DNA of 41,786 nt from Octopus bimaculoides (GCF_001194135.2 NC_068999.1:55008597-55050382), one strand, 5' to 3'. Counted from the stretch's first letter, positions 1-41,591 are shown. Program-made: numbers and translations. The notes: generated by a model not told the origin, from the letters alone.

Positions 1-1104
1 GGGGGGGGGGGGAGAGAGAGAAATTCATTGCATGCCCAACCCCGGAGGTCACCGCACGCCACTGATATATACACACAATAGTACTTATATGTATCTATGT
101 ACGTAGATATGTAGGTATTGTATGTATATGAATATACGTATCCGTGACATATATTCCCGTGTGTGTGTGTGTGTGTGATTAGATATTTTAACTGCATGTA
201 CTGCGTGCCTTATCGGTTCTGTGTACGTGTACATCGCCTGTATGTATGTGTATATAAGTGTGATGAGTAAAGTGGCCGGTTGTCCAAGTGTGAATCATGT
301 TAAATACATAGTAACAGCTATATATTTCCTCCTCCTCCTCCTCCTTTTCTCCCTGTGTGATTTCAAACAACTCTTACTACTGATAAGGAGGAGGAGGATT
401 ATTCCAAGACTGAAAATAGGAAAGTCTCAATGAAATACGTCTGTCAAAAGCAAAACAATTCCCGTTTAATTCGTTATTTAAAGTAGATGAAAGCTTCTTC
501 TTCAATTACAGTAAGAACAAAAATATATGTACATATAATTCGAATGGAATTTCACAGCGTCGCAACTCCACGTTTGCCCGTTACTACCACTTTCCTCAAG
601 ACATCATCATGGTGACCTTTTGACCACCGACCGTAGCAACCGAAAGGTGAAGAGTTAAATTTGTCTCCGGACTAGTCTGACGAGTTGTCCACGAAACTAC
701 GGCTTTCGTGGATGCGGAACCATTGGTCACTCTATGACCAGACATTAACTTTATTACTTTAATATCAATANNNNNNNNNNNNNNNNNNNNNNNNNNNNNN
801 NNNNNNNNNNNNNNNNNNNNNNNNNNNNNNNNNNNNNNNNNNNNNNNNNNNNNNNNNNNNNNNNNNNNNNATATATATATATATATATATATATATATCT
901 ATATATATATACATATATATTTACTAAATTTATATATATATATATTTATATATAGGTCTATATATATGTTACACCACAGTCATTTTGTGATCTTTGCTAC
1001 CCTGGTATCTATTAACCAATTTATTTTGTCCGAGTTAATTATTAACTAGGAGAAAATAAATACATATAATAATATATATATATACATATATATGGGAGAA
1101 TATA

Positions 1105-2582: not shown

Positions 2583-2763
2583 GAGCAAAACGCATGTCAA
2601 TAAAAGTTCCTTTAATTCCTACACATGTTTCGAAATAAATGAGAGCCCTTTCACAAAGAAGAAAGAGCTGCTGGGGTTCCTCATATATTTCTCTTCAGGG
2701 CTCTCATTTATTTTGAAGCATGTGTAGGAATTAAAGGAACTTTTATTGACATGTGTTTTGCTC
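2583..2763. repeat. Long inverted repeat (67-bp arms) containing a hammerhead core on the minus strand
   Basis: Arms 2583-2649 and 2697-2763 are reverse complements at 64/67 positions. The minus strand has CTGAAGA, a GAAATA...TATTTC stem II and GAAACATGTGTA. Confidence 0.85.
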
Positions 2764-3759: not shown

Positions 3760-3955
3760 CATCATCATTTAACGTCCGCTTTCCATGCTAGCATGGGTTG
3801 GACAATTTGACTGAGGACTGGCAAACCAGGTGGCTGCACCAGGCTCCAATCTGATCTGGCAGAGTTTCTACAGCTGGATGCCCTTCCTAACGCCAACAAC
3901 TCCAAGAGTGGAGTGGGTGCTTTTACATGCCACTGGCACGAGGGCCAGTCAGGCG
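3760..3955 (-). mobile_element. RTE LINE 3' end copy
   Basis: Reverse complement of the same RTE tail, starting with (TCA)n on the plus strand. Confidence 0.7.
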
Positions 3956-4699: not shown

Positions 4700-4948
4700 G
4701 TGACAGGTGACCAAGACTCTTGGCGATATACCGTGCTTGTGTTGACCTATCAAACTAAGGGAGACCTGGTGTCAGGTCAGTGGCACATAAAAAGCACTCA
4801 CTACACTCTCGGAGTGGTTGGTGGCATTCAGCTGTAGAAACCTTGCCATATTAGATTGGAACCTGGTGCAACACCACCAGCTTCCCTTTTTCAGTCAAAG
4901 CGTCCAACCCATGCAAGCATGGAAAGCGGATGTTGAACGATGATAATG

Positions 4949-4950
<2 letters not shown>
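4700..4950 (+). mobile_element. RTE LINE 3' end copy
   Basis: Same tail motifs (aaaagcac...ctacactctcggagtggttgg...ccaacccatgcaagcatggaaagcgga). Confidence 0.7.
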
Positions 4951-5012
<62 letters not shown>

Positions 5013-5143: not shown

Positions 5144-5297
5144 CACTAAGCAGAACCAGAATTGCAAGAAATAAGTGTCAAAACAACGCAATAGACATGG
5201 AAAACACTATCTTAATGACTGGCAATTAAGATAGTGTTTCCCATGGCTACTGAGTTGTTTTAACTCTTATTTCATGCAATATTGGTGCTAATTAGTG
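5144..5297. repeat. Palindromic MITE-like element
   Basis: Arms 5162-5216 and 5225-5279 are complementary at 48/55 positions around an 8-nt loop. Weaker pairing extends outward to cactaa/ttagtg. Confidence 0.8.
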
Positions 5298-5381: not shown

Positions 5382-6765
5382 TATATAAACTGTGTATCAC
5401 GCTTTATTGCAGGTCAAATTTTTGTTGATATTTTCAACATTAAGCATTATACAAACATGAAACTTGGTTCACTGAAAGATCCTAGGTAGGTACGTATGTA
5501 CGCAATGAACATTTCAATCGTATTGATAAGCTACATACAAAGTTATGTTGTGTATTTTGAGGTGTTTTCAACTGTCATGCTTTATTGCAGGTGTATGAAA
5601 ATGTCAATTTAAGGTAATGAAACAAAGTATTATCGTCATTTTATTGTAATAATGAAACATGCTACCGAAGAATAGCAGCAAAAGATATGAAACACAATTT
5701 AATTATCAGTGCTGTACTTTATTTGTCTACAGAACTTCCTTGTTTAGAAACAAACAGTCTTTTGTCCACAGAAGCTGTTAGCCGACTAATCTGAGATGTT
5801 ATGGTACTGGCAATTGTTTTGATCTTTTCCCACAGGGCATCCTTTGATGAAAACTGGATACCTCCTTCATACACTTTCCTCTTCAAGATCGACCAGAGCT
5901 GTTCAATAGGGTTTAGGTCAGGAGAACAGGGAGGCCAAATCATGAGTAACTGGCCAGTGATTCCCAAAGTTGCGAGGTACGAAATTGTGGCCTTGGCTGA
6001 ATGCAAAAGAGCATTGTCGATGTGAGTGGCAGATCATCTAACCATACTGCAAAATGCCCCTCCAGAAATGAGGTGTAGGAGTTGCTGGTGAGTTTGACAC
6101 CTTCTAGTACTTGGAAAGGCCCGACAAGTTCATTTCCTATGGTTCCTACCCCAAACATGGCACTGCATGTGATGCAGGCGAGAAGCTCCAAGAGGTCCTC
6201 AAACTTTGGCCCATCCGTCAAGGCCATCCAGAGTAGCTCTGGCCTCATCTGCAAAGAGGACATCTGGGAAATTGATCATTATGAACTTCCGTGCCCAATC
6301 AATATGCTCCACGTTGTGGTTCTTGCTTAGGATGCGTCTAGCAATGCACTTAACACTTCCAGCTTCTCTTTAAGCATCCTATACCAGGTGCTTCTGAACA
6401 AAGGAGCAGCCCCAGCACTTTCAAATATTGCAGCACTTGTGCTACTGAGGCCTATTCTTACTTGTCTACCTATTTTTTGGTTGTCATGCCGAGATACACT
6501 TCTCGTACCTTTATCTTGCATTGGTTTGGTGGTGGAGTTTTCCACATATGCCTTCAATGTCCCGACAGAGCGTGACAGTTGAAAGCACTTCGAAATACAT
6601 AACTCAAAATAATTTTGTATGTAGCTTATGAATATGATTGAAATGTTCACTGCATACCTACCTACCCAGGATCTTTCAGTGGACTGAGTTTCATGTTTGT
6701 ACAATGTATAATATTCAAAATATCAACAAAAATTTGACCTGTAATAAAGCGTGATAGTTTATATA
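5382..6765 (-). mobile_element. Tc1-like DNA transposon (DD37E, TRT-like) with ~200-bp TIRs
   Basis: About 5382-5580 and 6568-6765 are reverse complements with TA-rich ends. The interior encodes frameshifted transposase pieces. Confidence 0.9.
5719..6515 (-). pseudogene. Decayed Tc1-family transposase
   Basis: Fragments VLFADEARATLDG, NELVGPFQV and DNALLHSAK...WPPCSPDLNPIEQLWSILKRKVYEGG, with 37 residues between the second D (6016-6018) and E. Several frameshifts. Confidence 0.88.
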
Positions 6766-8154: not shown

Positions 8155-9126
8155 TACATAGGCATACCTACACTAGCGTGGCCCCACCGACTGTTTTCTC
8201 ATCATTTTCATATATATANNNNNNNNNNNNNNNNNNNNNNNNNNNNNNNNNNNNNNNNNNNNNNNNNNNNNNNNNNNNNNNNNNNNNNNNNNNNNNNNNN
8301 NNNNNNNNNNNNNNNNNNNNNNNNNNNNNNNNNNNNNNNNNNNNNNNNNNNNNNNNNNNNNNNNNNNNNNNNNNNNNNNNNNNNNNNNNNNNNNNNNNNN
8401 NNNNNNNNNNNNNNNNNNNNNNNNNNNNNNNNNNNNNNNNNNNNNNNNNNNNNNNNNNNNNNNNNNNNNNNNNNNNNNNNNNNNNNNNNNNNNNNNNNNN
8501 NNNNNNNNNNNNNNNNNNNNNNNNNNNNNNNNNNNNNNNNNNNNNNNNNNNNNNNNNNNNNNNNNNNNNNNNNNNNNNNNNNNNNNNNNNNNNNNNNNNN
8601 NNNNNNNNNNNNNNNNNNNNNNNNNNNNNNNNNNNNNNNNNNNNNNNNNNNNNNNNNNNNNNNNNNNNNNNNNNNNNNNNNNNNNNNNNNNNNNNNNNNN
8701 NNNNNNNNNNNNNNNNNNNNNNNNNNNNNNNNNNNNNNNNNNNNNNNNNNNNNNNNNNNNNNNNNNNNNNNNNNNNNNNNNNNNNNNNNNNNNNNNNNNN
8801 NNNNNNNNNNNNNNNNNNNNNNNNNNNNNNNNNNNNNNNNNNNNNNNATATATATAAAAGGCACACAAACGTTTACAAATGAGAGGAAATAAGTACTCAA
8901 TATCTGTAGTAGAGTTTACTCATTCGTTCGAAGTTGATGGTTTACAAACTCCACAAATTCCGAGGAGTGAAATACGTGTGAAACCTCAGCTTCAAACCAA
9001 TACATACATACATTAAACCTGAACCTATATATATATATATATGCTCACTATATAGAAACATATATAGTATGTGAAATACATCCATACGTTACATTAATAT
9101 GTGTTTGTGTGGTTTGTTTAACTTAC

Positions 9127-11699: not shown

Positions 11700-13035
11700 A
11701 TTGCTAAGGTGAAGATTAGCATTAAATATAGTGATGAATTCAGGGTACAAGTAGGGTACAAGGCTCAGTCCTCAGCCTCCTCTTGTTCATCATAGTCCTC
11801 CAGGCAATAACAAAGGAATTTAAAATGGGCTGCTCCTGGGAGCTCCTCTATGCTGATGACCTTGCTCTTATAGCTGAATCACTACCGGAAATCAAGAAGA
11901 AATTTCAGGTGTGGAAGCAATGTCCAGAATCAAAGGGCCTTAGAGTTAATCTAGCAAAAACTAAAGCAGACAAACCACAAATCCCTTTAGGTAGATGACT
12001 ATGCTCAATGTGTAGAAAAGGTGTAGGCAGAAACTGCCTAACTATGGACACATAAGAGGTGCAGCAGCATCAGAGGATGGTTGACAGAGAAGCACGACTA
12101 ACACTAAAGATGTACAGAAAATAAGCTCCACCAAATGGCAGTGGGGGGGGGGGAAGATAGCAGTTGATAGCTTCCGTTACGTAGGCGACCAAGTCAGTAG
12201 TGGAGGTGGATGCTCCAAGAGTGTAGCTTCTAGAATAAGAATAGGCTGGGCAAAGTTCAGAGTGCTCCTACCTTTGTTGGTAACAAAGGGCCTCTCCCTC
12301 AGAGTGAAAGGCAGATTGTATGATGCCTGTATGCGAAAAGCCATGCTACATGGTAGTGAACAAGGACTGGCACTGCCGAGGACATGCACAGGCTTCAAAG
12401 AAATGAAGCTAGTATGCTTCACTGGATGTGCAATGTCTGTGCATGTACAACAAAGTGTAAGCTTCTTGAAAGGACAGTTGGGCATAAGAGGCATGAGATG
12501 TGGTGTACAAGAGAGATGACTGCATTGGTATGGTCACGCGATGCGTATGAATGCATATGACAGCAATGTGAAGAAATGCTGATCTCTAACAGTGGAGGAA
12601 AGCTGTGGAAGAGGGAGACCCAGGAAGACATGGGATGAGGAGGTAAAACATGATCTTTGAATGTTGGGCCTCACAGAAGCAATGACTAGTGTTCATGACC
12701 TTTGGTGATATGCAGTGCTTGAGAAGACCTGTCAAACCAAGTGAAATCATAGTTGTAGCCATTGTTGGTGTCACATAACTAGCACTTGTGCCAGTGGCAC
12801 ATAAAAAGCACCTTTTTGAGTGTTGGGCCTCACAGAGGCAATGACTAGTGACTGAGACCTTTGGCAATATGCTGTGCTTGAAGAAGACCCATCAAGCCAA
12901 GTGAAATCATAGTTGTGGCAGATACTGGTGTCATGCAACTGGCACTCATGCCAGTGGTATACAAAAGCGCCCATTATACTCTTAGAGCAGTTGGCATTAG
13001 GAACGGCATCCAGCTGTGGAGTCTGGTGCAACCCC
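11700..13035 (+). mobile_element. 5'-truncated RTE LINE (RT C-terminus to 3' UTR)
   Basis: Encodes ELLYADDLALIAESL...GLRVNLAKTK and RLASRIRIGWAKFRVLLPLL...RLYDACMRKAMLHGSE, followed by the RTE 3' tail. The tail contains a ~160-bp tandem duplication (about 12661-12960). Confidence 0.88.
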
Positions 13036-16744: not shown

Positions 16745-17135
16745 AGTGGCTGTGTGGTAAGTAGCTTGCTTACCAACCACATAGTTCCGGGTTCAGTCCC
16801 ACTGCGTGGCACCTTGGGCAAGTGTCTTCTACTATAGCCTCAGGCCAACCAAAGACAGAAACTGAAAGAAGCCCGTCGTATATATGTATATATATATATG
16901 TGTGTGTGTGTATATATATATGTTTGTGTGTTTGTGTTTGTCCCCCCCCCCCNNNNNNNNNNNNNNNNNNNNNNNNNNNCTTACGTCCCCATAACTTAGC
17001 GGTTAGGCAAAAAGAGACCAATAGAATAAGTACTAGGCTTACAAAGAATAAGCCCTGGGGTCGATTTGCTCGACTAAAGGTGGTGCCCCAGCATGGCCGC
17101 AGTCAAATGACTGAAACAAGTAAAAGAGTAAAGCA
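16745..17135 (+). mobile_element. tRNA-derived SINE with internal (TA/TG)n microsatellite (most abundant family here)
   Basis: Head gtggctgtgtggtaagtagcttgcttaccaaccac...ggttcagtcccactgcg, tail ...cagcatggccgcagtcaaatgactgaaacaagtaaaag. Other copies lie near 1780, 11300, 25495, 26740, 27860, 29985, 32575 and 39735. Confidence 0.85.
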
Positions 17136-19330: not shown

Positions 19331-19984
19331 AACTGGATGCAAATGGGTAAATATTTATTGATACAAGGTGTTGAAACATGGTTTGTGTATAAGTGTGAAA
19401 GAACAGATTTATTTTATGTTTCTTTCTATCATCAAATCAAGTGCTGTCCATACACTGGGTGATGAAATGCATGGTCTATATACAGTGTGAAAAGGACTCA
19501 ATATTTAATGTTTTGTTAAATATCATCCTAACATAGAACCTTACTTCATATTTTAACAGATTATTACAAATTTCTTTCTTCTTCGTTTCTGATATAATGG
19601 ATTGTATCAGTCAATGGAAACATCTTGAACGTTTGATTATGTCTCATGGAGGAAGTTCTGAACTGAAATGAAAACTTCTATGTCTTTAGAAGCTAATTAT
19701 TTATATATTGTATGCATGCATGTATATATGTATGGATGTTTATTATTCAGTTTTATTTCAAGATTTCTTGCCAATAGAGAAAGAACCGGTTTCTTACCCA
19801 GATCCAAGGCTCCTTCATTGGAATTTCAACAACATCAACAGGGTTTTTTTGTTTGCTTGTATGTATGTATGTATGTATGTATGTTTTGTTTTATGTATGT
19901 ATTTTCATACATATAGATGCATGTCTTAGATATGTGCATATATATTCAAATGTATGTGTGTATGTGTCATCATCATCCCATCCT

Positions 19985-20250
19985 CCTCCTCCTCCTCATC
20001 ATCATCATTTAATATTGGCATGGGTTGGATGGTTTGGCCGGGGCTGGCAAACCAGAAGGTTGCACCATGCCCCAGTTGTCTTTCTAATGCCAACCACCTT
20101 ACACAGTGTACTGGATGCTTTTAGATGGTGCTGGCACAGGTGCTCCTTATGCGACACTGGCATGGGTGCTTTTTACATGGCACAGGGACAGGTGATTTTT
20201 ACATGATGCCAGCACAGGTGCTTTTTATGAGATGTCAGTATGCCAGCACA
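19985..20250 (-). mobile_element. Decayed RTE 3' end copy
   Basis: Reverse complement of the RTE tail (catcatcatcatttaa...gcatgggttggatggtttg...ctaatgccaaccac...gtgctttttacatgg). Confidence 0.6.
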
Positions 20251-20275: not shown

Positions 20276-20276
<1 letters not shown>

Positions 20277-20341
<65 letters not shown>

Positions 20342-20392
20342 ATAGAGACTGGCAGATAGATAGATAGATAGATAGATAGATAGGTAGATATA
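20277..20392. repeat. (GATA)n microsatellite
   Basis: Read directly from the sequence. Confidence 0.95.
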
Positions 20393-20535
20393 GTTATAGA
20401 TATATATATCAAAGTGCAAACTTAAAACCAGTGTGAATATGGTAAAAGCACGTTCAGACTTGTAGACAAGCTGTTCACCGTGTTTTGTCATGGAGAAAAT
20501 TTTTTACTGTAGACATATGGTGTAAATACTCCCAA

Positions 20536-20638
20536 ATCAGCTCACAGCGCCACCTTTTCAGACTGTGGGATGCAAGCATTTCAGAGTAGTTATCTCCTCT
20601 TCAGCCACAGAAACCACACGGTGGTGCTGCAAGCTGAT
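20536..20638 (-). ncRNA. Extended type I hammerhead ribozyme (self-cleaving RNA motif)
   Basis: Minus strand reads CUGUGG-CUGAAGA-GGAG-auaacua-CUCU-GAAA-UG-cuug-CA-UC/CCACAG. It has both core motifs, a 6-bp stem I, a 4-bp stem II (G.U at 10.1/11.1), a 3-bp stem III closed by G(CUUG)C and an AUC cleavage triplet. A distal 19-bp helix pairs 20536-20554 with 20620-20638. Confidence 0.85.
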
Positions 20639-20863
20639 AAGAGAGACAATCTCTCTTATGTCTTTCAAGTGAACATACGTCGGCCAGTAGCGCAAACTGA
20701 TGGCTGTGATGTTGGTGTTGCTGCCACTGCCGCCATTACTGTCACAGTCGCAACTGCTGTCAGTGTTGTTACCAGCTGGTATATGCACACACACATATAT
20801 TTATGTGTATATATATTATACACAGACACAAATGCACGTTTGTATGTATGTGTAATGTATATA

Positions 20864-21662
20864 CAAGATGGTATCAAAAAGTTCTCGGACTAGTTATGTT
20901 TAATAAAAATAACATATTCACCTAAGTTTTAACATCATCTCCTTCGAAATAGTCACCTTGCGCAGCAATACACTGGTCCCAGTATTCCTGCCACTTTTAC
21001 AATCTGTCCTGGAAGTCGTTTACCATAAGCAAGTTGAGGACCTTATGCAATTCGGTCTGGGTCTTGACAATGATGTTAAAACGGTGACCTTTGAGCTGCA
21101 TTTTCATTTTGGGGAAGAGACAGAAGTCTGCAGATGCTAAATTTGGTGAATAGTGGTGAATAGCGCAGTTGTGAAAGTGATACCATGCTTTTGGCAAGAA
21201 AGTCACAAGTGAGGAGAGTTCAGTGACAGGGTGCATTGCCATTGTGAAGAATCCAATTCTTTGCACTCTATCATATTTCCAGGGGTGACATTTGTGGTAG
21301 GTCTTCCACATTGCTCATCATCTTCCAGGGATGTTTCTCCGCTTTGAAGTGCTTGTGCCACTCGAAACATTATGTACGACCCATTGCCTCATTGCAATAA
21401 ACTCGCCAAAAGCATGCTCAATGTCATTGTAGCAGACTTCCCAAGTTTAACACAAAATTTCACGTTGGTTCTTTGTTCCTATCCAGCATACACATGATCA
21501 CAAAAACATAAAAAATTCACAACTTGCAAATTAAACACAGTGATGTCACTCAGCTCACTGCCTCGTGAAGGTCACTGCTAGCTCTCACTGCACATGCAAC
21601 CGTATGCTGTTATCTGCTGGTGCACTACAGAACTAGTCCAAGAACTTTTTGATACCACCTCA
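20864..21662 (-). mobile_element. Internally deleted mariner transposon
   Basis: TIRs of about 30 bp (gatggtatcaaaaagttctcggactagtt and aactagtccaagaactttttgataccacc) are flanked by TA at 20862-20863 and 21663-21664. Minus strand encodes EQRTNVKFCVKLGKSAT and YSPNLASADFCLFPKMKMQLKGHRF. Confidence 0.9.
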
Positions 21663-22239
21663 TATGTGTATGATTACGTGTGCATGTTGGTATTCCACAC
21701 TTGTCACCACTTGAGTAAAAAAAAGTTGTTCAAATTCTGTTGTTCAAATTCCATTGATCAAATTTCTTGCTCACATTATGACTGATTGCTTTGTACTTTT
21801 GAAGACTTTGGGAATGGAAAAAAATCCTTTAATTGCAAACAGGATTGGCAATAGTAAGAAAACCTGGTTGTAAAATCCTGCCTCAAGTAACTCCTCATCT
21901 TAGCCATATTGGCAAGGAAAAAATGAATGTTGAACAAAGCAATAAATTATCATCATCATCATTGTCATCATCATCTTCATCATGACATTCTCCTCTCCTA
22001 CATCATCATCATCATCCTCATCATCGCTATCACCACCACCATCACTGCTACCATGATCATCATAGCATTCTCCTCCACCTCATCACCCTCCACCTCATCA
22101 TCATCATTGTGATTGTCATCATCATTATCATCACCATCACCACCACCACCACCACCACCACCACCACCACTACCATAGTCATTGTCATCATCAATTTACA
22201 TCTGCTATCCTTTCACTTACCAAAAAGAATTTATATTGC

Positions 22240-22340
22240 TGTACAAATACAATGGACGAGTCTTTGATGTTTCGAGCCTATGCTCCTCAACAGAAAGGAA
22301 TGAGGAGAAAACAGAGGGAGGAAAAAATGAAGAGGAGAAA
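22240..22340 (-). mobile_element. Penelope-like pLTR fragment with variant minimal hammerhead-like motif
   Basis: Minus strand reads CTTT-CTGTTGAG-GAGC-ATAG-GCTC-GAAA-CATC-AAAG, preceded by a pyrimidine-rich tract. Same family as 1105-1209. Confidence 0.5.
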
Positions 22341-22344
22341 ATAA

Positions 22345-25102
22345 CATATGCGAATTAACTGCTGTTCCCCATTCTAGGGTCTCACCAGCCCACACCTTCC
22401 ACACCCTCAGAGTTGGTATACTCAATGTTGACACATTGAAAGGTAGGTCTGGTGAGATTGTTGAGATGCTTGAACAGAGATGTGTAGATTTGTGCTGCAT
22501 CCAAGAAGTAAGGTGGAGTGGAAGTTCTGCTAGGTTCCTCACAGGCAAAGAACATAGGTATAAGATTTTCTGGGCAGGGAACACTGACAGGGTCAGGGGC
22601 GTGGGTATACTTCTTGCAGAGAAATGGGTTGATAAGGTAATCGAGGTAGTCAGAGTCTGTGATAGAATACTTAAGATTAGATTAGTGCTGCAACATGGAT
22701 TAACAACCATTATCTTGGCCTATGCCCCTCAGCCAGGGCTACCTGACGAACAGAAAGACTGATTTTATGACAACCTCTTGCAGACAACTTTATCGACAAT
22801 GACAGGGACCTTCTCTTTGTGGCTGGTGACCTCAACGGGCATGTTAGACAACATCCAGGGAGCTTCAATGGTGTACATGGTGGCTATGGATTAGGTTCCT
22901 GCAATCAGGAGGGAACTAGGCTGCTGGAGTTCTGTGATACAAATGATCTTATGATCTGTAATATTAACTTCAGGAAACCTGCCAGTCATGTATTCACCTA
23001 CAAATCTGGTGGACACACTAGTCAGATTGACTACATTCTCACCAAGAAACAGGAAAGATGGCTACTTATAAATGCCAAAACCTTCCTAGATGAAGAATGC
23101 ACCCCACAACATAGACTAGTAGGTAACAACTTCAGGATCAGGGCTAAATGGCTGCTCAGAAGATGACCAGCATGGAAAAGAAGGGTCTGGAAGCTTAAGG
23201 ATCCTGTGAATGGACTGAAATTTAGAGACATATTACTTGAAATTTTTGACAAAAAAGAAGAGGATATAGCATCACATAATGTGGAAGACAACTGGAGGTT
23301 GCTACGAGACAACCTGTTGAGAGCTACTGACCAGATCTGTGGATGGTGCAAAGTCCCCTCTCGACCTAAGGTAACATGGTGGTGGAACAATGTAGTTGAC
23401 AGGGTCATTAGGGAAAAGAAACAGGCAAGGAAGAATTGGAAGTGCAGTGGTAGCAGGGAACTGTATCGGATCACCAGAAGGGAAGCTAGGAGACAGGTTT
23501 ACTTAGCAAAAAGGGGAAGTAGATAAGAAAAGATTTGCCAATGTTCTGCATTGTGAGGACCAAAGATTTGAAGTATTTCGTATTGCAAGATAGTGTGTGA
23601 GAGAGAATCATGATGTCATAGGAGAGAAATGTGTCTGCATGGATGATGGCTCACTTGCATTTAATGATGCTACAAAGAGACAGACTTGGAGGCGTCACTA
23701 TGAAATGTTGCTAAATGAAGAGAATGAACAGGAGAAAGAGAGTCTACCAAATGTGAACCCAACAGAGGGACCAGCTATTTGAATTAACAATACCTTGGTA
23801 GATAAAGCAATTAAGGGTATGAAAACAGGGAAAGCCCCTGGCTCATCAAGAATGCTTAAAATATCTGGCATTGAAGACTATAGTCTGGTCACCCGTATAG
23901 TCAACCAGCTGATACATGAAAGAGTCATACCCAGTGACTGGTGTAGCAGCACCATAGTCAACTGCTACAAAGGTAAAGGTGACACATTAGATACAAATAA
24001 TTACAGAGGTATCAAATTGTTGGATCAGGTGATGAAAGTCACAGAGAGGGTCATAGCCCAACTAATTAGAGACAGGGTTAGTTTAGATGAGATGCAGCTT
24101 GGGTTTGTGCCAGGGAAAAACACCACCGATGCTACATTTCTGGCAAGACAGCTGCAGGAGAAATACCTAGCCAAAGATAAACCTCTGTACTTGGCTTTTG
24201 TTGACTTGGAGAAAGCCTTTGACAGGACCCCCTGATCCCTTATCTGGTGGTCAATGCGGTAACTAGGGATAGATGAGTGGTTAGTGAGAGCTGTACAAGC
24301 CATAGACAGGGATGCTGTCAGTAAGGTGAGGGTTAGCAATGAGTACAGTAAAGAATTTCAGGTAGTAGGGGTTCACCAAGGACCATTCCTCAGCTCCCTC
24401 TTATTCATCATAGCCCTTCAGGCAATAACAGAGGAATTCAAGACAGACTGTTCCCAGGAGCTCCTCTATGCTGATGACCTTGCTCTCATTGCTGAGTCAC
24501 TATCAGAACTAGAGGAGAAGTTTCAGGTGTAAAAGCAAGGTCTAGAATTGAAGGGCCCTAGACTCAATCTTACAAAAGCCAAAGTCTTAGTAAGTGGGAA
24601 GGCAGACAAACCACAAATCCCTTCAGGTAGATGGCCCTGCTCGATCTGTAGAAAAGGTGTAGGAAGAAACTCCATAAAATGTACCTGGTGTAAGCTACGG
24701 ACACATATAAAGTGCAGCAATATCAAAGGAAGGTTAACCGGGAATATGGTAGAAGATGAGGTGGTGAAGCACGACCTTCGAGTGTTTAAACATTGGGTTT
24801 CGTGGAGGCAATGACAGGTGACTAAGACCTTTGGTAATATACTGTGCTTGACAAGACCTATCAAGCCAAGTGAGATCATAGTTGTGGCCAATGCTGGTGC
24901 CATGTAACTGACATCTCTGCCAGTGGGATATAAAAAGCACCCACTACAGTCTTGGAGTGGTTGGCGTTAGGAAGGGTATCCAGCTGTAGAAACCATGCCA
25001 AATCAAATTGGAACCTGGTGCAGCTCCTTGGCTTACCAGTTCTCAGTCAAACCATCCAACCCATGCCAGCATGGAAAACGGACGTTAAATGATGATGATG
25101 AT
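22345..25102 (+). mobile_element. Near-full-length decayed RTE-clade LINE
   Basis: APE motifs (CIQEVRW, GVGILL, AYAPQ, GDLNGH, SQIDYIL, QHRLV), RT motifs (KGKGD, NYRGIKLL, GFVPG, AFVDLEKAFD, VHQG, LLYADDL) and a (TGA)n 3' tail. Confidence 0.93.
22400..24750 (+). pseudogene. Fragmented RTE endonuclease-reverse transcriptase ORF
   Basis: ORF pieces 22436-22762, 22819-23166, 23206-23526, 23597-23782, 23795-24235, 24284-24532 and 24548-24750 lie in domain order, broken by stops and frameshifts. Confidence 0.9.
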
Positions 25103-27165: not shown

Positions 27166-28059
27166 TGAAATGACAGGATTTTATTTTGTGCAGTAGAGAT
27201 GAATTTGAGATGTCTGGAGTATGGTGTGAAGGTACCAACTTTTATTTTGTGCATTAGAGATGACTTTGAGATGTCTGGAGTATGGTCTGAAGATACCACC
27301 TTTAAGGGGGTCAAACAATCAACTCCAGTAAATACTTTTTAAAGTCTGATACTTATTGTATCAGTCATTTTTGGCTGACCACTAAGTTATGGGGATGGAA
27401 ACAAACCAGCACTGGTTGTCAAATGGTTGGGGGAGGGGCAGATCAAACCATGCCAGCATGGAAAACGGACGTTAAATGATGATGATGATGATGGTCATGT
27501 TGAATTAAATTGGAATTTAATTACTGTGTGACCTGATAGTAGTTCTTCAGCCGAAATGTGTACAAAGAGTTCTACTTAATTCTCCAAATTCATTTTCTGC
27601 CATACATATGTACGTATATATATATATATATATATCAAAATAAGCAACAAGGATATCCAGAGGTGGTGGTGGTGGTGATGTTGGTGGTGATGGTTGTGGT
27701 GGTAGTGTTGGTTGTGATAGTGATAATTGTGGTGGTGGTGCTAGTGGTGGTGATGGTTATGGTGGTGGTGGTGGTGGTAATGGTGTTTATGATGTTTATG
27801 ATGACAGTGTTGGTTGTGTTGGTCATATTGTTTGTGGTGGTGGTGGTGGTGCTAGACTATAATAGAAAGCATTTACCCAACGTACCACATGTTGAGACTG
27901 AGCCCAAAAACTACATGGTTACAAAGTGAGCTTCTTAACCACACAGCCATGTCTGTTCCTATGCAACATATCTTTTTCTAAAGGCGTGATTAATCTAGCA
28001 GGAATGAGAGTAAATGCAGGGCTTTACTCTCATTCGATGCAGGAGCTTCGAGCAGGAAG

Positions 28060-31184: not shown

Positions 31185-31460
31185 GTGATGATGATGATGG
31201 TGGTGGTGGTGGTGGTGGTGGTGGTGGTGTTGGTGGTACTGGTGGCAGTGATGAAGAAACCGATTATGAAGATGATCATGATGGTGATGACAATGATGAT
31301 GATGATGATGACGNNNNNNNNNNTGATGAAGAAACCGATTATGAAGATGATCATGATGGTGATGACAATGATGATGATGATGATGACGACGACGACGACG
31401 ACGATGATGATGAAGATGGTTATGAAGATGATGATGATGATGATGATGATGGTAAAGATG
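31185..31460. repeat. (GAT/GGT)n compound trinucleotide repeat
   Basis: Read directly from the sequence; it produces spurious poly-His and poly-Met ORFs. Confidence 0.9.
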
Positions 31461-34139: not shown

Positions 34140-35319
34140 TTCAGTAGTTTTATTTTTATAATGTGCTTTCACTTCACTACCGAGCACAGCTCTGTGTGCC
34201 TTGGGTATGTGCTGTGGTTTGCTGTGGTGCTCTTATGGTTACTGTATCGAAAGTGTTTTGCGTAGGATGTGTGCAGTGCCCAGTAGTGCAATTTTCTGTA
34301 TGTTATATATATATTTGTAAGTCCTGGTGTTTTTGTTATGTGTTTGTCTGAATATTTTTTTATTATACCTAAGGCACCTACTATGATAGGAATTGTTTCT
34401 GTTTTTAGATTCCACATTCNNNNNNNNNNNNNNNNNNNNNNNNNNNNNNNNNNNNNNNNNNNNNNNNNNNNNNNNNNNNNNNNNNNNNNNNNNNNNNNNN
34501 NNNNNNNNNNNNNNNNNNNNNNNNNNNNNNNNNNNNNNNNNNNNNNNNNNNNNNNNNNNNNNNNNNNNNNNNNNNNNNNNNNNNNNNNNNNNNNNNNNNN
34601 NNNNNNNNNNNNNNNNNNNNNNNNNNNNNNNNNNNNNNNNNNNNNNNNNNNNNNNNNNNNNNNNNNNNNNNNNNNNNNNNNNNNNNNNNNNNNNNNNNNN
34701 NNNNNNNNNNNNNNNNNNNNNNNNNNNNNNNNNNNNNNNNNNNNNNNNNNNNNNNNNNNNNNNNNNNNNNNNNNNNNNNNNNNNNNNNNNNNNNNNNNNN
34801 NNNNNNNNNNNNNNNNNNNNNNNNNNNNNNNNNNNNNNNNNNNNNNNNNNNNNNNNNNNNNNNNNNNNNNNNNNNNNNNNNNNNNNNNNNNNNNNNNNNN
34901 NNNNNNNNNNNNNNNNNNNNNNNNNNNNNNNNNNNNNNNNNNNNNNNNNNNNNNNNNNNNNNNNNNNNNNNNNNNNNNNNNNNNNNNNNNNNNNNNNNNN
35001 NNNNNNNNNNNNNNNNNNNNNNNNNNNNNNNNNNNNNNNNNNNNNNNNNNNNNNNNNNNNNNNNNNNNNNNNNNNNNNTCTCTTCTTCTTCTTCGTATTT
35101 GTTAGGTAGTATGATTTCTTGTTTGTATTTGTCAGCTTCCTTAAATACTGAAAACAGTTTTTTGTTTTGCTCGTGTTTTGTGGCTATTTGTATTAGTTTT
35201 CCTTGTTTCTAGAGTAGGTATTTTAGCAGTCCTATGGTGGTTATTTTATAATAGTTTTCCAGCTGTATAAGACCCCTGCCACCTTCTGTGCGTTGTATAT
35301 ATAGCCTTTCTATGTCAGA

Positions 35320-36069: not shown

Positions 36070-36086
36070 CATCATTNNNNNNNNNN

Positions 36087-37680: not shown

Positions 37681-38686
37681 TAGGGACCTGCAAAAAGAGT
37701 TTGAACAATGCACCCATGTACACACACGCCACCCCTATAAGGCAGATACCTCACAAAATAAACTGTCTCCTACCACCCCCAGCACACACCCTTTTACCCA
37801 AATTGTCCCCCCACATATACACAGACCTCACACACACATATTACACACTGCAGGCTAACATAGCCCGCCCCCAACTTTATCCTTTACAGAAAGAAAACAG
37901 ACCAACAAACACAGCTATATATACTTACACCCTTGGAAAAAAAAAATATACATATAACACCACTACACATACCACACCCCCATANNNNNNNNNNNNNNNN
38001 NNNNNNNNNNNNNNNNNNNNNNNNNNNNNNNNNNNNNNNNNNNNNNNNNNNNNNNNNNNNNNNNNNNNNNNNNNNNNNNNNNNNNNNNNNNNNNNNNNNN
38101 NNNNNNNNNNNNNNNNNNNNNNNNNNNNNNNNNNNNNNNNNNNNNNNNNNNNNNNNNNNNNNNNNNNNNNNNNNNNNNNNNNNNNNNNNNNNNNNNNNNN
38201 NNNNNNNNNNNNNNNNNNNNNNNNNNNNNNNNNNNNNNNNNNNNNNNNNNNNNNNNNNCCATACCACACCCCCATACCACACCCCCATACCACACCCCCA
38301 TATCACACTTCCCATCTCCACAGGGGCACCACATTAATAATACACATTTTTTCCACTTAAAGATAACAGCATACCCAACAAAAGGACATAACTCCTAACC
38401 TAATCCCCAGACCCTTTTTCATTTCACCACCTTTTTCACAGCAGATGCTGACCAGTTGTGTTAATCCACATCTGACAATAGGGAGCAGTCATCATATTCC
38501 CTTCCATATCAGTAACTCTGATGAGCATAAAGTTATATAACCGGATTGTTATTTAACACTCCATTGCATTGGAGATCAGCCATGATGAATATCTAATACT
38601 ATACATTTCAGATAATATACCCACTCTACTGACAGATATACGAGTGCACTTTTTCCCTGACTTATGGTCTCAGACAACTCATGCAC

Positions 38687-39359: not shown

Positions 39360-39627
39360 GTTGAGCAGTTCTTGTCTTGCACGGTACTTGGTGATCTTGT
39401 TGGTGCCTGTGTCACATAAAAAGCACTGGTGATAGTACCACGTAAAATGCTTTGGTGATGGTTCCATATAGAAAACACAGTGGTGCTGGTGCTGCTTAAA
39501 AAGCACCCAGTACACCCTGTAAAGTGGTTGGCATTAGGAAGGGCATCCAGCTGTAGAAACCGTACCAAAACACCCAACTCATGCCAGCATGGACAACAGA
39601 CATTAAAGAATGACAATGATGATGATG
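39360..39627 (+). mobile_element. RTE 3' end copy
   Basis: Contains gtggttggcattaggaagggcatccagctgtagaaacc...catgccagcatgg and a (TGA)n end. Confidence 0.65.
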
Positions 39628-40055: not shown

Positions 40056-41591
40056 ATATAAGAGTGTTGTAGCTTGCTTGAAGCATTGTAGTATAAGAAT
40101 TGAATAATAAATGAAATGAGGAAAGCTTCTAACAATGCAGAGATGAAGGTTGAAAAACCTTTACATTTTTCAGGCAGAATGGCTTATCTTCAGAAGAAAT
40201 GTGTCTACGTAGATCCTACCATTTGGATAGCAGATGTTGTCCAAGGGGAAGGCAAAGGCCAATACCGACTGGGACCAGCTATGATGCAACTCATTTCTAC
40301 AGCTGACTGAACTGGGCGACTTGTAATAAAGAGTCTTGCTCTCTCCNNNNNNNNNNNNNNNNNNNNNNNNNNNNNNNNNNNNNNNNNNNNNNNNNNNNNN
40401 NNNNNNNNNNNNNNNNNNNNNNNNNNNNNNNNNNNNNNNNNNNNNNNNNNNNNNNNNNNNNNNNNNNNNNNNNNNNNNNNNNNNNNNNNNNNNNNNNNNN
40501 NNNNNNNNNNNNNNNNNNNNNNNNNNNNNNNNNNNNNNNNNNNNNNNNNNNNNNNNNNNNNNNNNNNNNNNNNNNNNNNNNNNNNNNNNNNNNNNNNNNN
40601 NNNNNNNNNNNNNNNNNNNNNNNNNNNNNNNNNNNNNNNNNNNNNNNNNNNNNNNNNNNNNNNNNNNNNNNNNNNNNNNNNNNNNNNNNNNNNNNNNNNN
40701 NNNNNNNNNNNNNNNNNNNNNNNNNNNNNNNNNNNNNNNNNNNNNNNNNNNNNNNNNNNNNNNNNNNNNNNNNNNNNNNNNNNNNNNNNNNNNNNNNNNN
40801 NNNNNNNNNNNNNNNNNNNNNNNNNNNNNNNNNNNNNNNNNNNNNNNNNNNNNNNNNNNNNNNNNNNNTGTACTGATGAATGACTGTGTCATCACCCCAC
40901 ACTAACATATAGATCTATATATATCAATATAGCGATCATATGACTATGTTGGTGGTGATAGTGGTTGTAGTTGTGGCGTTGTCGTTGGCTGTTGCAGCTC
41001 AGGCGATGAAGGTTGATAAAGGTAATACTACAAAAACACTGCCACTACTAAAATCACTAACACCACCACCACCACCACCACCACCACCACCGTTACCATT
41101 ACTAATACCATCTCCGACACTCCATTGCCCTTATTCTGCAGTTTAGCGCAGATGCTGAATGATGCAGTTTTATGCAGAATTGCACAGCTCTACATGCTTC
41201 TGAAGATTGAGAAATACCAGAGAGAAAATGTGTTGTCTTGGAGAATTCTTCCGCCAATAGCAATGGCAGATAAAGTGAGAGAGAGACAGGGGGAGGTAGA
41301 GAAGAGAGAGAAACAGAGAGAGGGTGATTGTGATATTTACTGGTAGAGAGAACATAGGAACTGTAATAACAGCAGCTGTCATAATAGGTGTGGTGACCTT
41401 AACTGTAGCAACAACAACAGCAGCAATACCAACAACATGTGTCATAACAACAACAGGCTGCACCACACATATCCATGCACATGTACACATACATACATAC
41501 ATGCTTGCATGCATGTACACACACACACACATACACACGCATATATATATGCATATATCTGCATATCTTTCTATCTTTTTGTGTGTATGTT

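What the first reader, a model, noticed from the sequence alone, without database searches (positions are those of the whole stretch)
20536..20638. Complete extended type I hammerhead ribozyme in apparently unique octopus-like DNA
Seen (minus strand, 5'->3'): stem I CUGUGG (20610-20605); core CUGAAGA (20604-20598); stem II GGAG/CUCU around loop AUAACUA; GAAA (20582-20579); stem III A-U, U-A, G-C closing CUUG; cleavage triplet AUC; stem I' CCACAG. Predicted cleavage is between 20569 and 20568. Beyond an internal loop, a further 19-bp helix forms (20620-20638 with 20536-20554: 16 Watson-Crick pairs, 2 G.U, 1 mismatch). Established: CUGANGA/GAAA/NUH is the hammerhead consensus; G(CUUG)C is a stable tetraloop; natural type I hammerheads such as Schistosoma Sm-alpha use a loop II to stem I bulge contact about 6-7 bp from the core, the geometry seen here. 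The only core deviation is G10.1.U11.1, explicable as CpG decay. Inference: this is either a solo retrozyme/Penelope-derived ribozyme or a domesticated intronic ribozyme. No second copy or RT ORF flanks it in this window.
Basis: partly seen in the sequence, partly recalled or inferred. Interest (0 to 1): 0.9.

Follow-up and report, generated by a model that had tools for sequence, protein, structure and literature searches.

The report
Solitary, partly decayed type I hammerhead motif
The window holds one real, complete hammerhead ribozyme motif of the ordinary animal type, most likely a lone decaying copy left by a small retroelement and weakened by one CpG mutation; such motifs are common in animal genomes, so it is a modest find.

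Summary
On the minus strand, 20610-20563 reads CUGUGG-CUGAAGA-GGAG(AUAACUA)CUCU-GAAA-UG(CUUG)CA-UC^CCACAG, closed by a 19-position outer helix (20638-20620 / 20554-20536). It is the only hammerhead motif in the window. About 6e-6 to 3e-4 are expected there by chance.

Its layout is the published canonical animal type I hammerhead: helix I 6 bp, helix II 4 bp, short helix III with a small loop.

- No Rfam hammerhead model reports it, even at E<=10. A phage control shows these models also under-score other plausible hammerheads.
- All four imperfect pairs lie in TpG/CpA. Each is one CpG transition from a perfect pair, in DNA with CpG o/e 0.32.
- The U at 11.1 is predicted to let core bases A7-G8-A9 pair with CUCU (p 0.62). 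The proper helix II gets p 0.16, against 0.95 with C11.1.
- No second copy, tandem repeat or Penelope gene lies in the window.
- No relative could be retrieved, so copy number, orthology and the octopus origin remain untested.

Best reading: a solitary, decaying copy from a hammerhead-bearing retroelement. It is a new member of a known kind, of modest interest.

The parts
20536..20638 (-). Whole extended hammerhead: outer helix, internal loop, helix I, core, helix II, helix III
   Evidence: Sequence read; pair-by-pair table; MFE -47.8 kcal/mol, z = -4.2 against shuffles
20620..20638 (-). 5' arm of the 19-position outer (distal) helix
   Evidence: 16 WC, 2 G.U, 1 A.C with 20536-20554; pair probability about 1.0
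20536..20554 (-). 3' arm of the outer helix
20611..20619 (-). 5' side of the internal loop (loop 1), GUGUGGUUU
   Evidence: lacks the UAC seen in the HH9 consensus
20555..20562 (-). 3' side of the internal loop (loop 1), UCUGAAAA
20605..20610 (-). Helix I, 5' strand CUGUGG (positions 2.6-2.1)
   Evidence: six WC pairs with 20563-20568; p = 0.85
20598..20604 (-). Core box C3 U4 G5 A6 A7 G8 A9 (CUGAAGA)
20583..20597 (-). Helix II GGAG/CUCU with the 7-nt loop 2 AUAACUA; G10.1 (20597) pairs with U11.1 (20583) as a wobble
   Evidence: hammerhead register p = 0.16, alternative register A7G8A9G10.1/CUCU p = 0.62; with C at 20583 the hammerhead register has p = 0.95
20579..20582 (-). G12 A13 A14 A15.1 (GAAA)
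20570..20579 (-). Helix III (A-U, U-A, G-C) with loop CUUG; AUGCUUGCAU is palindromic at 8 of 10 positions
   Evidence: low predicted stability (p = 0.11), as is usual for animal type I hammerheads
20568..20569 (-). Predicted cleavage site: after C17 (20569), before C1.1 (20568)
   Evidence: Follows from the hammerhead numbering applied; not tested
20563..20568 (-). Helix I, 3' strand CCACAG (1.1-1.6)
20411..20780 (-). Non-repetitive unit of about 370 bp (GC 0.45) that carries the hammerhead. It lies between (AGAT)n at 20276-20410 and a TA/CA-rich tract at 20780-20860. It is a possible solitary retroelement monomer, but its boundaries are inferred
   Evidence: no other copy in the window; fold z = -2.1

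Best explanation
This is a genuine hammerhead ribozyme sequence of the canonical animal type I architecture, present as a solitary genomic copy. It most likely descends from a small non-autonomous hammerhead-bearing retroelement, such as a non-LTR retrozyme or a SINE-like element, or from the Penelope-related lineage that those elements derive from. The copy appears to have landed in or next to microsatellite DNA and has since been decaying by CpG deamination. If the minus strand is transcribed, the RNA would fold into a long stem (19-position outer helix, internal loop, 6-bp helix I) that presents the core. It would then cleave itself after C20569, leaving a 2',3'-cyclic phosphate and a 5'-OH. 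The present copy is probably a poor ribozyme. The C11.1-to-U change weakens helix II and favours a competing helix that ties up A7, G8 and A9, and helix III is marginal for a monomer. With only one copy it cannot release a unit-length RNA or a circle. Shown here: the motif, its rarity by chance, its architecture, the CpG pattern of its defects and the predicted misfold. Inferred: the retroelement origin, transcription, and the level of activity.
For: The motif is complete and unique in the window. Chance expectation is 6e-6 to 3e-4 per window, lower still with the outer helix. Helix I of 6 bp, helix II of 4 bp and a short helix III with a small near-palindromic loop match what PMC4209133 calls the canonical metazoan hammerhead. 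PMC7229834 assigns most such motifs to non-LTR retrozymes of 150-450 bp with GC below 50%, and the unit here is about 370 bp with GC 0.45. Solitary monomers of retrozymes are documented and are spread evenly along chromosomes (bioRxiv 10.64898/2026.07.22.740005). The Rfam HH9 consensus has the same layout of distal helix, internal loop and 6-bp helix I, and I read the same layout by eye in the flanks of the coral retrozyme sequence. All four non-Watson-Crick positions lie in TpG or CpA and each reverts to a Watson-Crick pair by one CpG transition. By my own arithmetic, 10 of the 64 paired bases are CpG bases, so four random hits would all fall there with probability about 6e-4. Window CpG o/e is 0.32. 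The predicted misfold of the present sequence is relieved by C11.1. A natural hammerhead with a U.U at the base of helix II cleaves poorly as a monomer but still cleaves (PMC7229834). Cephalopod genomes are already known to hold hammerheads: 235 Rfam Hammerhead_1 hits in the giant squid (PMC6962438).
Against: No second copy, tandem repeat, terminal redundancy or Penelope gene (GIY-YIG, Penelope-type RT) lies in the 41.8-kb window. No relative was found in any collection I could reach, so a repeat-family origin is inferred from the literature and not shown. No Rfam hammerhead family reports the motif, even at E<=10. A covariance model built from four validated retrozyme hammerheads ranks it first in the window, but only at 12.6 bits, E = 0.2. 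The loops lack the archetypal tertiary-contact nucleotides. There are no non-CpG defects in 54 paired non-CpG bases. That could mean the copy is young, or that the structure is under constraint, which would favour the domestication rival.
Confidence: 0.6

Rival explanations
1. It is a host-retained (domesticated) single-copy self-cleaving ribozyme, comparable to the amniote intronic hammerheads HH9 and HH10. It would sit in an intron or untranslated region and cut the host transcript, with the long helix I holding the two products together.
For: It is solitary, and its layout is the same as the Rfam HH9 consensus: distal helix, internal loop, 6-bp helix I, 4-bp helix II, 3-bp helix III. Domestication of retroelement hammerheads in amniote introns is documented (PMC6155905). 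All 54 non-CpG paired bases are intact, and three of the four CpG changes keep pairing as G.U on the hammerhead strand.
Against: No exon or host gene could be recognised in the window: Pfam on 97 stop-free segments found only transposon domains plus weak hits to other families that were not followed up. So an intronic location is unknown. The one change next to the core (U11.1) is of the neutral-decay type and is predicted to favour a misfold. No ortholog is available. The locus is a patchwork of microsatellites and transposons.
Confidence: 0.12
2. It belongs to a SINE-like retroposon with an internal hammerhead, like Schistosoma Sm-alpha. This would be a single insertion on the minus strand ending in a (CTAT)n-type 3' tail and mobilised by a LINE, rather than a rolling-circle retrozyme.
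For: On the hammerhead strand the unit ends in a (TATC)n microsatellite at 20410-20276. A box-A-like TGGCGGCAGTGG lies upstream at 20735. RTE-like LINEs are present in the window. The motif is intact in the middle of the unit, not split at its ends.
Against: There is no box B, even allowing 2 mismatches, and no tRNA-like fold. No other copy in the window. The microsatellite may be unrelated to the unit. This is a sub-variant of the best explanation rather than a true alternative.
Confidence: 0.15
3. It is a chance hammerhead look-alike inside an unrelated foldback or inverted repeat, for example a miniature transposon or a palindrome born from microsatellites. It would have no ribozyme ancestry.
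For: Inverted repeats are frequent here: 94 pairs of at least 17 nt within 120 nt, including a few complex foldbacks. No Rfam hammerhead model reports the motif, and my own model gives only E = 0.2. A large genome is expected to hold 0.4 to 21 chance motifs of this quality, and how many windows the scan read is unknown to me.
Against: Even if helix I comes free from a pre-existing hairpin, the core boxes, helix II and helix III must all fall in register inside a 36-nt interior. My rough estimate is about 1e-8 to 1e-7 per hairpin (own arithmetic from the frequencies). The 6-bp/4-bp architecture and loop sizes match the natural type exactly. The inferred ancestor has a canonical G10.1-C11.1 pair.
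Confidence: 0.06

Closest known systems
Canonical metazoan type I hammerheads of non-LTR retrozymes (Acropora, Mytilus, Ambystoma; Cervera and de la Pena 2020, PMC7229834)
   Same: Type I topology. Helix I is 6 bp and helix II is 4 bp. Helix III is short with a small loop. Helix I continues into further pairing beyond an internal loop. The host unit is a few hundred bp with GC below 50%. A defect at the base of helix II also occurs in the axolotl Amex2 motif.
   Different: There is a single copy and no tandem array in 41.8 kb. The core reads CUGAAGA, UGAAAU and AUC where the four published examples read CUGAUGA or CUGAGGA, GAAAC, and GUC or GUA. Helix II is GGAG/CUCU with G.U at 10.1-11.1. Helix III has 3 bp and an imperfectly palindromic loop. 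The loop nucleotides are not the archetypal ones. A model built from the four published motifs gives only 12.6 bits.
[quoted passage not shown]
   Same: A solitary motif with the same order of elements: distal helix, internal loop, 6-bp helix I, core, 4-bp helix II, 3-bp helix III (HH9 consensus shown).
   Different: The outer helix is much longer (19 positions against about 5). Loop 1 has no UUAC/UAC and loop 2 is not CAAAAA. The Rfam HH9 model does not report it at E<=10. Conservation and intronic location are untested.
Minimal hammerheads of Penelope-like elements (Cervera and de la Pena 2014, PMC4209133)
   Same: An animal retroelement context is plausible. Most such motifs occur as single, dispersed, truncated copies.
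   Different: Penelope min-hammerheads have a long helix II (6-8 bp), a short helix I (4-5 bp), an extra base between positions 9 and 10.1, and little or no helix III. None of these applies here. No GIY-YIG or Penelope RT lies in the window.
Schistosoma Sm-alpha hammerhead (SINE-like satellite; Ferbeyre 1998; structure by Martick and Scott 2006)
   Same: From my own knowledge of the crystallised construct: 6 bp in helix I before the internal loop, and 4 bp in helix II with a 6-nt loop. This is the geometry that allows the loop 2 to loop 1 contact. The candidate has 6 bp, 4 bp and a 7-nt loop.
   Different: The loop sequences differ, the candidate carries G.U at 10.1-11.1, and no multi-copy family has been demonstrated for it.

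Membership tests
Hammerhead ribozyme (consensus definition) | Core boxes CUGANGA, GAAA and U16.1-H17 in the right order | tested here: met
   CUGAAGA 20604-20598, GAAA 20582-20579, U20570, C20569
Hammerhead ribozyme (consensus definition) | Three helices I, II and III radiating from the core, including the A15.1-U16.1 pair | tested here: met
   6, 4 and 3 pairs respectively
Hammerhead ribozyme (consensus definition) | Highly conserved G10.1-C11.1 pair | tested here: not met
   G20597.U20583 is a wobble. The U lies in a TpG, one CpG transition from C. It is predicted to favour an alternative register
Hammerhead ribozyme (consensus definition) | Site-specific Mg2+-dependent self-cleavage after position 17 | not testable with these tools
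   Needs in vitro transcription and a cleavage assay
Rfam hammerhead families (clan CL00010 and RAGATH-1 hammerhead) | Covariance-model score at or above the gathering threshold | tested here: not met
   No hammerhead family was listed at gathering or at E<=10 on 381 nt and 58 nt. Control: a plausible phage hammerhead reaches only 24 bits against a gathering score of 52, so the threshold is conservative
Canonical metazoan type I hammerhead (PMC4209133) | Helix I of 6 bp and helix II of 4 bp | tested here: met
   One search compared with the definition quoted
Canonical metazoan type I hammerhead (PMC4209133) | Short helix III capped by a small palindromic loop | tested here: inconclusive
   There are 3 bp rather than 1-2, and a 4-nt loop. 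AUGCUUGCAU is palindromic at 8 of 10 positions
Canonical metazoan type I hammerhead (PMC4209133) | Conserved loop 1 and loop 2 nucleotides for the tertiary contact | tested here: not met
   Loop 1 is GUGUGGUUU / UCUGAAAA and loop 2 is AUAACUA. There is no UAC or NAAANA pattern as in the HH9 consensus. Mussel retrozyme hammerheads also lack these nucleotides
Non-LTR retrozyme | Head-to-tail tandem repeats of 150-450 bp, each with a hammerhead | tested here: not met
   One motif only and no repeat of the unit in the window. Solitary monomers are known, but they are defined by similarity to a family that I could not retrieve
Non-LTR retrozyme | Low GC (below 45-50%) and unit size of a few hundred bp | tested here: met
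   The unit 20411-20780 has GC 0.45, but its boundaries are inferred
Non-LTR retrozyme | Expression as linear and circular RNA | not testable with these tools
   No transcriptome data are available here
Penelope-like element hammerhead | Location in the flanking repeats of an element encoding a Penelope RT and GIY-YIG endonuclease; min-hammerhead architecture | tested here: not met
   Pfam on 97 stop-free segments found RVT_1 (LINE), DDE_3 and Exo_endo_phos_2 but no GIY-YIG. The architecture is canonical, not minimal
Domesticated intronic hammerhead (HH9/HH10 type) | Conservation at an orthologous intronic position across species | not testable with these tools
   No ortholog or gene annotation was reachable

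The most novel reading that the evidence does not exclude
The motif is a single-copy ribozyme kept by the host. It would be conserved at this position among related molluscs and would cut a host transcript, with a roughly 25-bp clamp keeping the two halves together. That would be an invertebrate counterpart of the amniote intronic hammerheads. The complete absence of non-CpG damage in 54 paired bases would then reflect selection on the structure.
Probability: 0.1. Interest if true: 0.65.

Novelty: new member of a known kind. Interest (0 to 1): 0.3.

Why it matters
Type I hammerheads are already known in thousands of copies in many animal genomes. A Rfam survey reported 235 in the giant squid. 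One more copy therefore adds little by itself. Two things give it some value. First, it is a clean example of a hammerhead that the field's structural descriptor would accept and that the curated Rfam models do not report at all. This shows how incomplete covariance-model annotation of this ribozyme is. Second, the canonical C11.1-G12 step is a CpG, so methylated genomes should erode hammerheads at exactly this position. In this sequence the resulting U is predicted to flip helix II into an inactive register. That is a simple, testable route by which retroelement ribozymes are silenced. If the copy proved to be conserved and single-copy, it would become a candidate for ribozyme domestication outside vertebrates.

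Tried and rejected
- Rfam at gathering threshold on the whole window, and at E<=10 on 381 nt and 58 nt: no hammerhead family was reported.
- Exact look-ups of four ORFs in or near the motif in the public contig index: none is on record.
- Protein-database search with the ORF that overlaps the motif, hoping to reach assemblies of the same or related animals: nothing.
- DNA pattern scans.
  - Metagenomes, scan 1: nothing.
  - Metagenomes, scan 2: four GC-rich bacterial chance hits without a hammerhead.
  - Viral contigs: nothing.
  - GTDB genomes: nothing in the first scan, then eight chance hits with no helix I.
- Organism check with the LINE reverse transcriptase. The best hit is 78% identical on a 586-nt contig labelled E. 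coli. 'Octopus' stays unverified.
- Search for Penelope genes or host exons by Pfam on 97 stop-free segments. There was no GIY-YIG domain. Apart from transposon domains there were only weak single-segment hits. One of them, FA_desaturase, may come from a His-rich low-complexity tract, but I did not identify which segment matched.
- tRNA-like or pol III promoter signals in the unit: no tRNA, a box-A-like string but no box B.
- Second copy, terminal redundancy or tandem structure of the unit: none.
- Covariance model from four published retrozyme hammerheads. It ranks the motif first, but at 12.6 bits and E = 0.2, which is too weak to count as evidence.
- A microRNA-precursor reading (Rfam mir-2329 at 18.7 bits against a gathering score of 90): rejected, since it only reflects the long hairpin.

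Full report
**Observation**

- Helix I is CUGUGG (20610-20605) with CCACAG (20568-20563), six Watson-Crick pairs.
- The core box CUGAAGA is at 20604-20598.
- Helix II is GGAG/CUCU around the loop AUAACUA.
- GAAA is at 20582-20579.
- Helix III is A-U, U-A, G-C closing CUUG.
- C17 is at 20569, so cleavage would fall between 20569 and 20568.
- Beyond a 9/8-nt internal loop, 20638-20620 pairs with 20554-20536: 16 Watson-Crick pairs, two G.U and one A.C.

The 116-nt RNA folds at -47.8 kcal/mol, z = -4.2 against dinucleotide shuffles. The plus strand folds almost as well. That is expected for an inverted repeat. Only the minus strand carries the ribozyme boxes.

**Chance**

My own descriptor finds this as the only hammerhead motif on either strand. 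That holds for a canonical descriptor and for a minimal, Penelope-type descriptor. Forty megabases of Markov sequence with the window's dinucleotide content gave seven relaxed motifs and none as good as this one. An analytic estimate reproduces that simulation (7.3 expected against 7 seen). It gives 3e-4 per window for helices at least this long, and 6e-6 with natural loop sizes. The outer helix adds a factor of about 6e-5.

Two caveats apply. A 2.7-Gb genome would still hold 0.4 to 21 chance motifs of this core quality. Inverted repeats are also common in this DNA. Even granting helix I for free from a pre-existing hairpin, my rough arithmetic puts the rest of the motif near 1e-8 to 1e-7 per hairpin. 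I therefore treat it as a sequence with real ribozyme ancestry and give about 6% to chance.

**Database tests**

No hammerhead family is reported at gathering threshold on the window. None is reported at E<=10 on 381 nt or on 58 nt.

As a control I fetched phage loci carrying CUGAUGAGGCC...GGCCGAAAC. None reached a gathering score. A textbook-looking motif in L049 scored 24.4 bits against Hammerhead_HH9, whose gathering score is 52. So the models are present and conservative. The candidate scores lower still.

At the permitted-variable positions it reads CUGAAGA, UGAAAU and AUC. The models expect CUGAUGA, CGAAAC and GUC.

A covariance model I built from four experimentally validated retrozyme hammerheads ranks the candidate first in the window. 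The four come from coral, mussel and two axolotl families; their sequences are in the supplement of PMC7229834. The score is only 12.6 bits, E = 0.2. By curated-model criteria, membership is not met. By the structural descriptor the field uses, it is met.

**Architecture**

Cervera and de la Pena define the canonical animal type I hammerhead as follows (PMC4209133):
- helix I of 6 bp;
- helix II of 4 bp;
- loop-loop contacts between helices I and II;
- a short helix III with a small palindromic loop.

The candidate has 6 bp and 4 bp. Its helix III has 3 bp and a 4-nt loop, and the helix III segment is palindromic at 8 of 10 positions. It lacks the features of Penelope minimal hammerheads: a long helix II, a short helix I, an extra base before 10.1, and no helix III.

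The HH9 consensus printed has the same order of elements: distal helix, internal loop, helix I, core. By eye I read the same order in the flanks of the coral retrozyme sequence. An extension of helix I is therefore normal, although 19 positions is long.

The loop nucleotides are not the archetypal ones (no UAC in loop 1, no NAAANA in loop 2). Only the geometry of the tertiary contact is supported, not the contact. Mussel retrozyme hammerheads share this lack.

**New result 1: the defects are CpG decay**

All four non-Watson-Crick positions among the 32 pairs lie in TpG or CpA:
- U.G at 20631/20543;
- G.U at 20630/20544;
- A.C at 20625/20549;
- G10.1.U11.1 at 20597/20583.

Each is one CpG transition away from a Watson-Crick pair. 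The window's CpG observed/expected ratio is 0.32, with TpG+CpA in excess at 1.37.

In the inferred ancestor, 10 of the 64 paired bases belong to CpGs. Four random changes would all land there with probability about 6e-4 (my arithmetic). The ancestor thus had a perfect 19-bp outer helix and the canonical G10.1-C11.1 pair. What has happened since is the commonest neutral mutation in methylated DNA.

No non-CpG paired base is damaged (0 of 54). With only six ancestral CpGs to date the copy, this is compatible with a fairly young insertion. It is equally compatible with constraint on the structure. I cannot separate the two.

**New result 2: the U at 11.1 is predicted to matter**

| Sequence | Hammerhead helix II register | Alternative register |
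|---|---|---|
| Present sequence | p = 0.16 | p = 0.62 |
| C restored at 20583 | p = 0.95 | p = 0.007 |

In the alternative register A7, G8, A9 and G10.1 pair with U11.1, C11.2, U11.3 and C11.4. That register buries catalytic bases. Nearest-neighbour models ignore tertiary contacts, so this is a prediction and not a measurement. A natural axolotl hammerhead with a U.U at the base of helix II still cleaves, though poorly as a monomer. Helix III is marginal in every version (p about 0.05-0.11), as is usual for animal type I motifs.

**Context**

The window is draft eukaryotic assembly with nine N-runs. It is dense in microsatellites and transposons:
- a mariner-type deletion derivative with 39-nt terminal inverted repeats at 20861-21665;
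- an RTE-like LINE with endonuclease, RT and a PHD-type finger at about 22331-24811 on the plus strand;
- a Tc1-like remnant at 5722-6275;
- another RT fragment at 11738-12516;
- a SINE-like repeat in at least six copies.

None of these RTs is Penelope-type, however. No GIY-YIG domain or host exon was detected.

The hammerhead sits in a non-repetitive stretch of about 370 bp with GC 0.45 (20411-20780). This stretch lies between (AGAT)n and a TA/CA-rich tract. It has no second copy, no tandem structure and no terminal redundancy in the window.

That size and composition fit a retrozyme monomer, and solitary monomers are documented in frogs. A SINE-like element with a microsatellite tail is an alternative. 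There is a box-A-like string, but no box B and no tRNA-like fold.

**Comparators**

I could not retrieve any relative:
- Exact ORF look-ups found nothing.
- A protein search with the overlapping ORF found nothing.
- DNA pattern scans of metagenomes, viral contigs and GTDB genomes gave nothing or only chance hits.
- The window's LINE RT finds at best a 78%-identical fragment on a 586-nt contig labelled E. coli.

The octopus attribution is therefore unverified. Copy number, orthology and covariation are untested. The literature shows that hammerheads in cephalopods are not new: 235 Rfam Hammerhead_1 hits were reported in the giant squid genome.

**Verdict**

| Reading | Weight |
|---|---|
| Solitary, decaying copy of a canonical animal type I hammerhead left by a small hammerhead-bearing retroelement, probably impaired by the CpG-derived U11.1 | about 0.6 |
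| SINE-like sub-variant of the same idea | 0.15 |
| Domestication | about 0.1 |
| Chance | about 0.06 |

It is a new member of a known kind. Its interest is modest, except as an illustration of Rfam's blind spot and of CpG erosion at the C11.1-G12 step.

Noticed in passing
window 22331-24811 (+): RTE-like LINE with an apurinic-type endonuclease (22331-23163), RT (23783-24529) and a C-terminal PHD/C1-type zinc finger (24533-24811), broken by several frame changes. Its closest database relatives are only 50-78% identical.
   Followed up: partly
window 20861-21665: Mariner-type deletion derivative with 39-nt terminal inverted repeats (87% complementary). Transposase C-terminal remnants lie on the minus strand (21000-21314). 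It sits about 220 bp from the hammerhead.
   Followed up: partly
window 5722-6275 (-) and 11738-12516 (+): A Tc1-like DDE_3 transposase remnant and a second LINE reverse-transcriptase fragment.
   Followed up: no
window 19980-20215, 2219-2431, 3791-3939, 4857-4998, 24888-25101, 39403-39586: A SINE-like dispersed repeat of about 150-230 bp, present in at least six diverged copies (62-79% identity) on both strands. One copy lies 200 bp from the hammerhead unit.
   Followed up: no
window 20637-20659 (-): A perfect 10-bp hairpin AUAAGAGAGA-UUG-UCUCUCUUAU, derived from a (GA)n/(TC)n tract. It abuts the hammerhead's outer helix and overlaps its first two bases, so the two helices could stack or compete.
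   Followed up: partly
window 2583-2763 and 5144-5297: Two long complex foldbacks. One has 67-nt arms at 96% and lies directly next to an assembly gap, so it may be an assembly artefact. The other has 73-nt arms at 84% with an 8-nt spacer.
   Followed up: no
window 771-870, 2433-2582, 8219-8847, 16953-16979, 31314-31323, 34420-35078, 36077-36086, 37985-38258, 40347-40868: Nine runs of N (2,381 bases in all), which mark the window as a gapped draft scaffold. Long apparent ORFs across them are artefacts.
   Followed up: yes
P0001: A 194-aa RT fragment 78% identical to the window's LINE is deposited as 'RNA-directed DNA polymerase, partial [Escherichia coli]' on a 586-nt contig. It looks like animal DNA contaminating a bacterial assembly.
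   Followed up: no
L049 10511-10595, 11707-11756, 12396-12468 (-): A viral contig carries three hammerhead motifs within 2 kb. The best scores only 24.4 bits against Rfam Hammerhead_HH9 (gathering 52) and 24.2 bits against RAGATH-1 hammerhead. Curated thresholds therefore miss plausible phage hammerheads too.
   Followed up: partly
window 12656-12957, 27179-27303, 31248-31451: Minisatellite-type tandem repeats: 160 bp x 1.9, 61 bp x 2.0, and a 75-bp GAT-rich unit x 2.9 that reads as poly-Asp.
   Followed up: no
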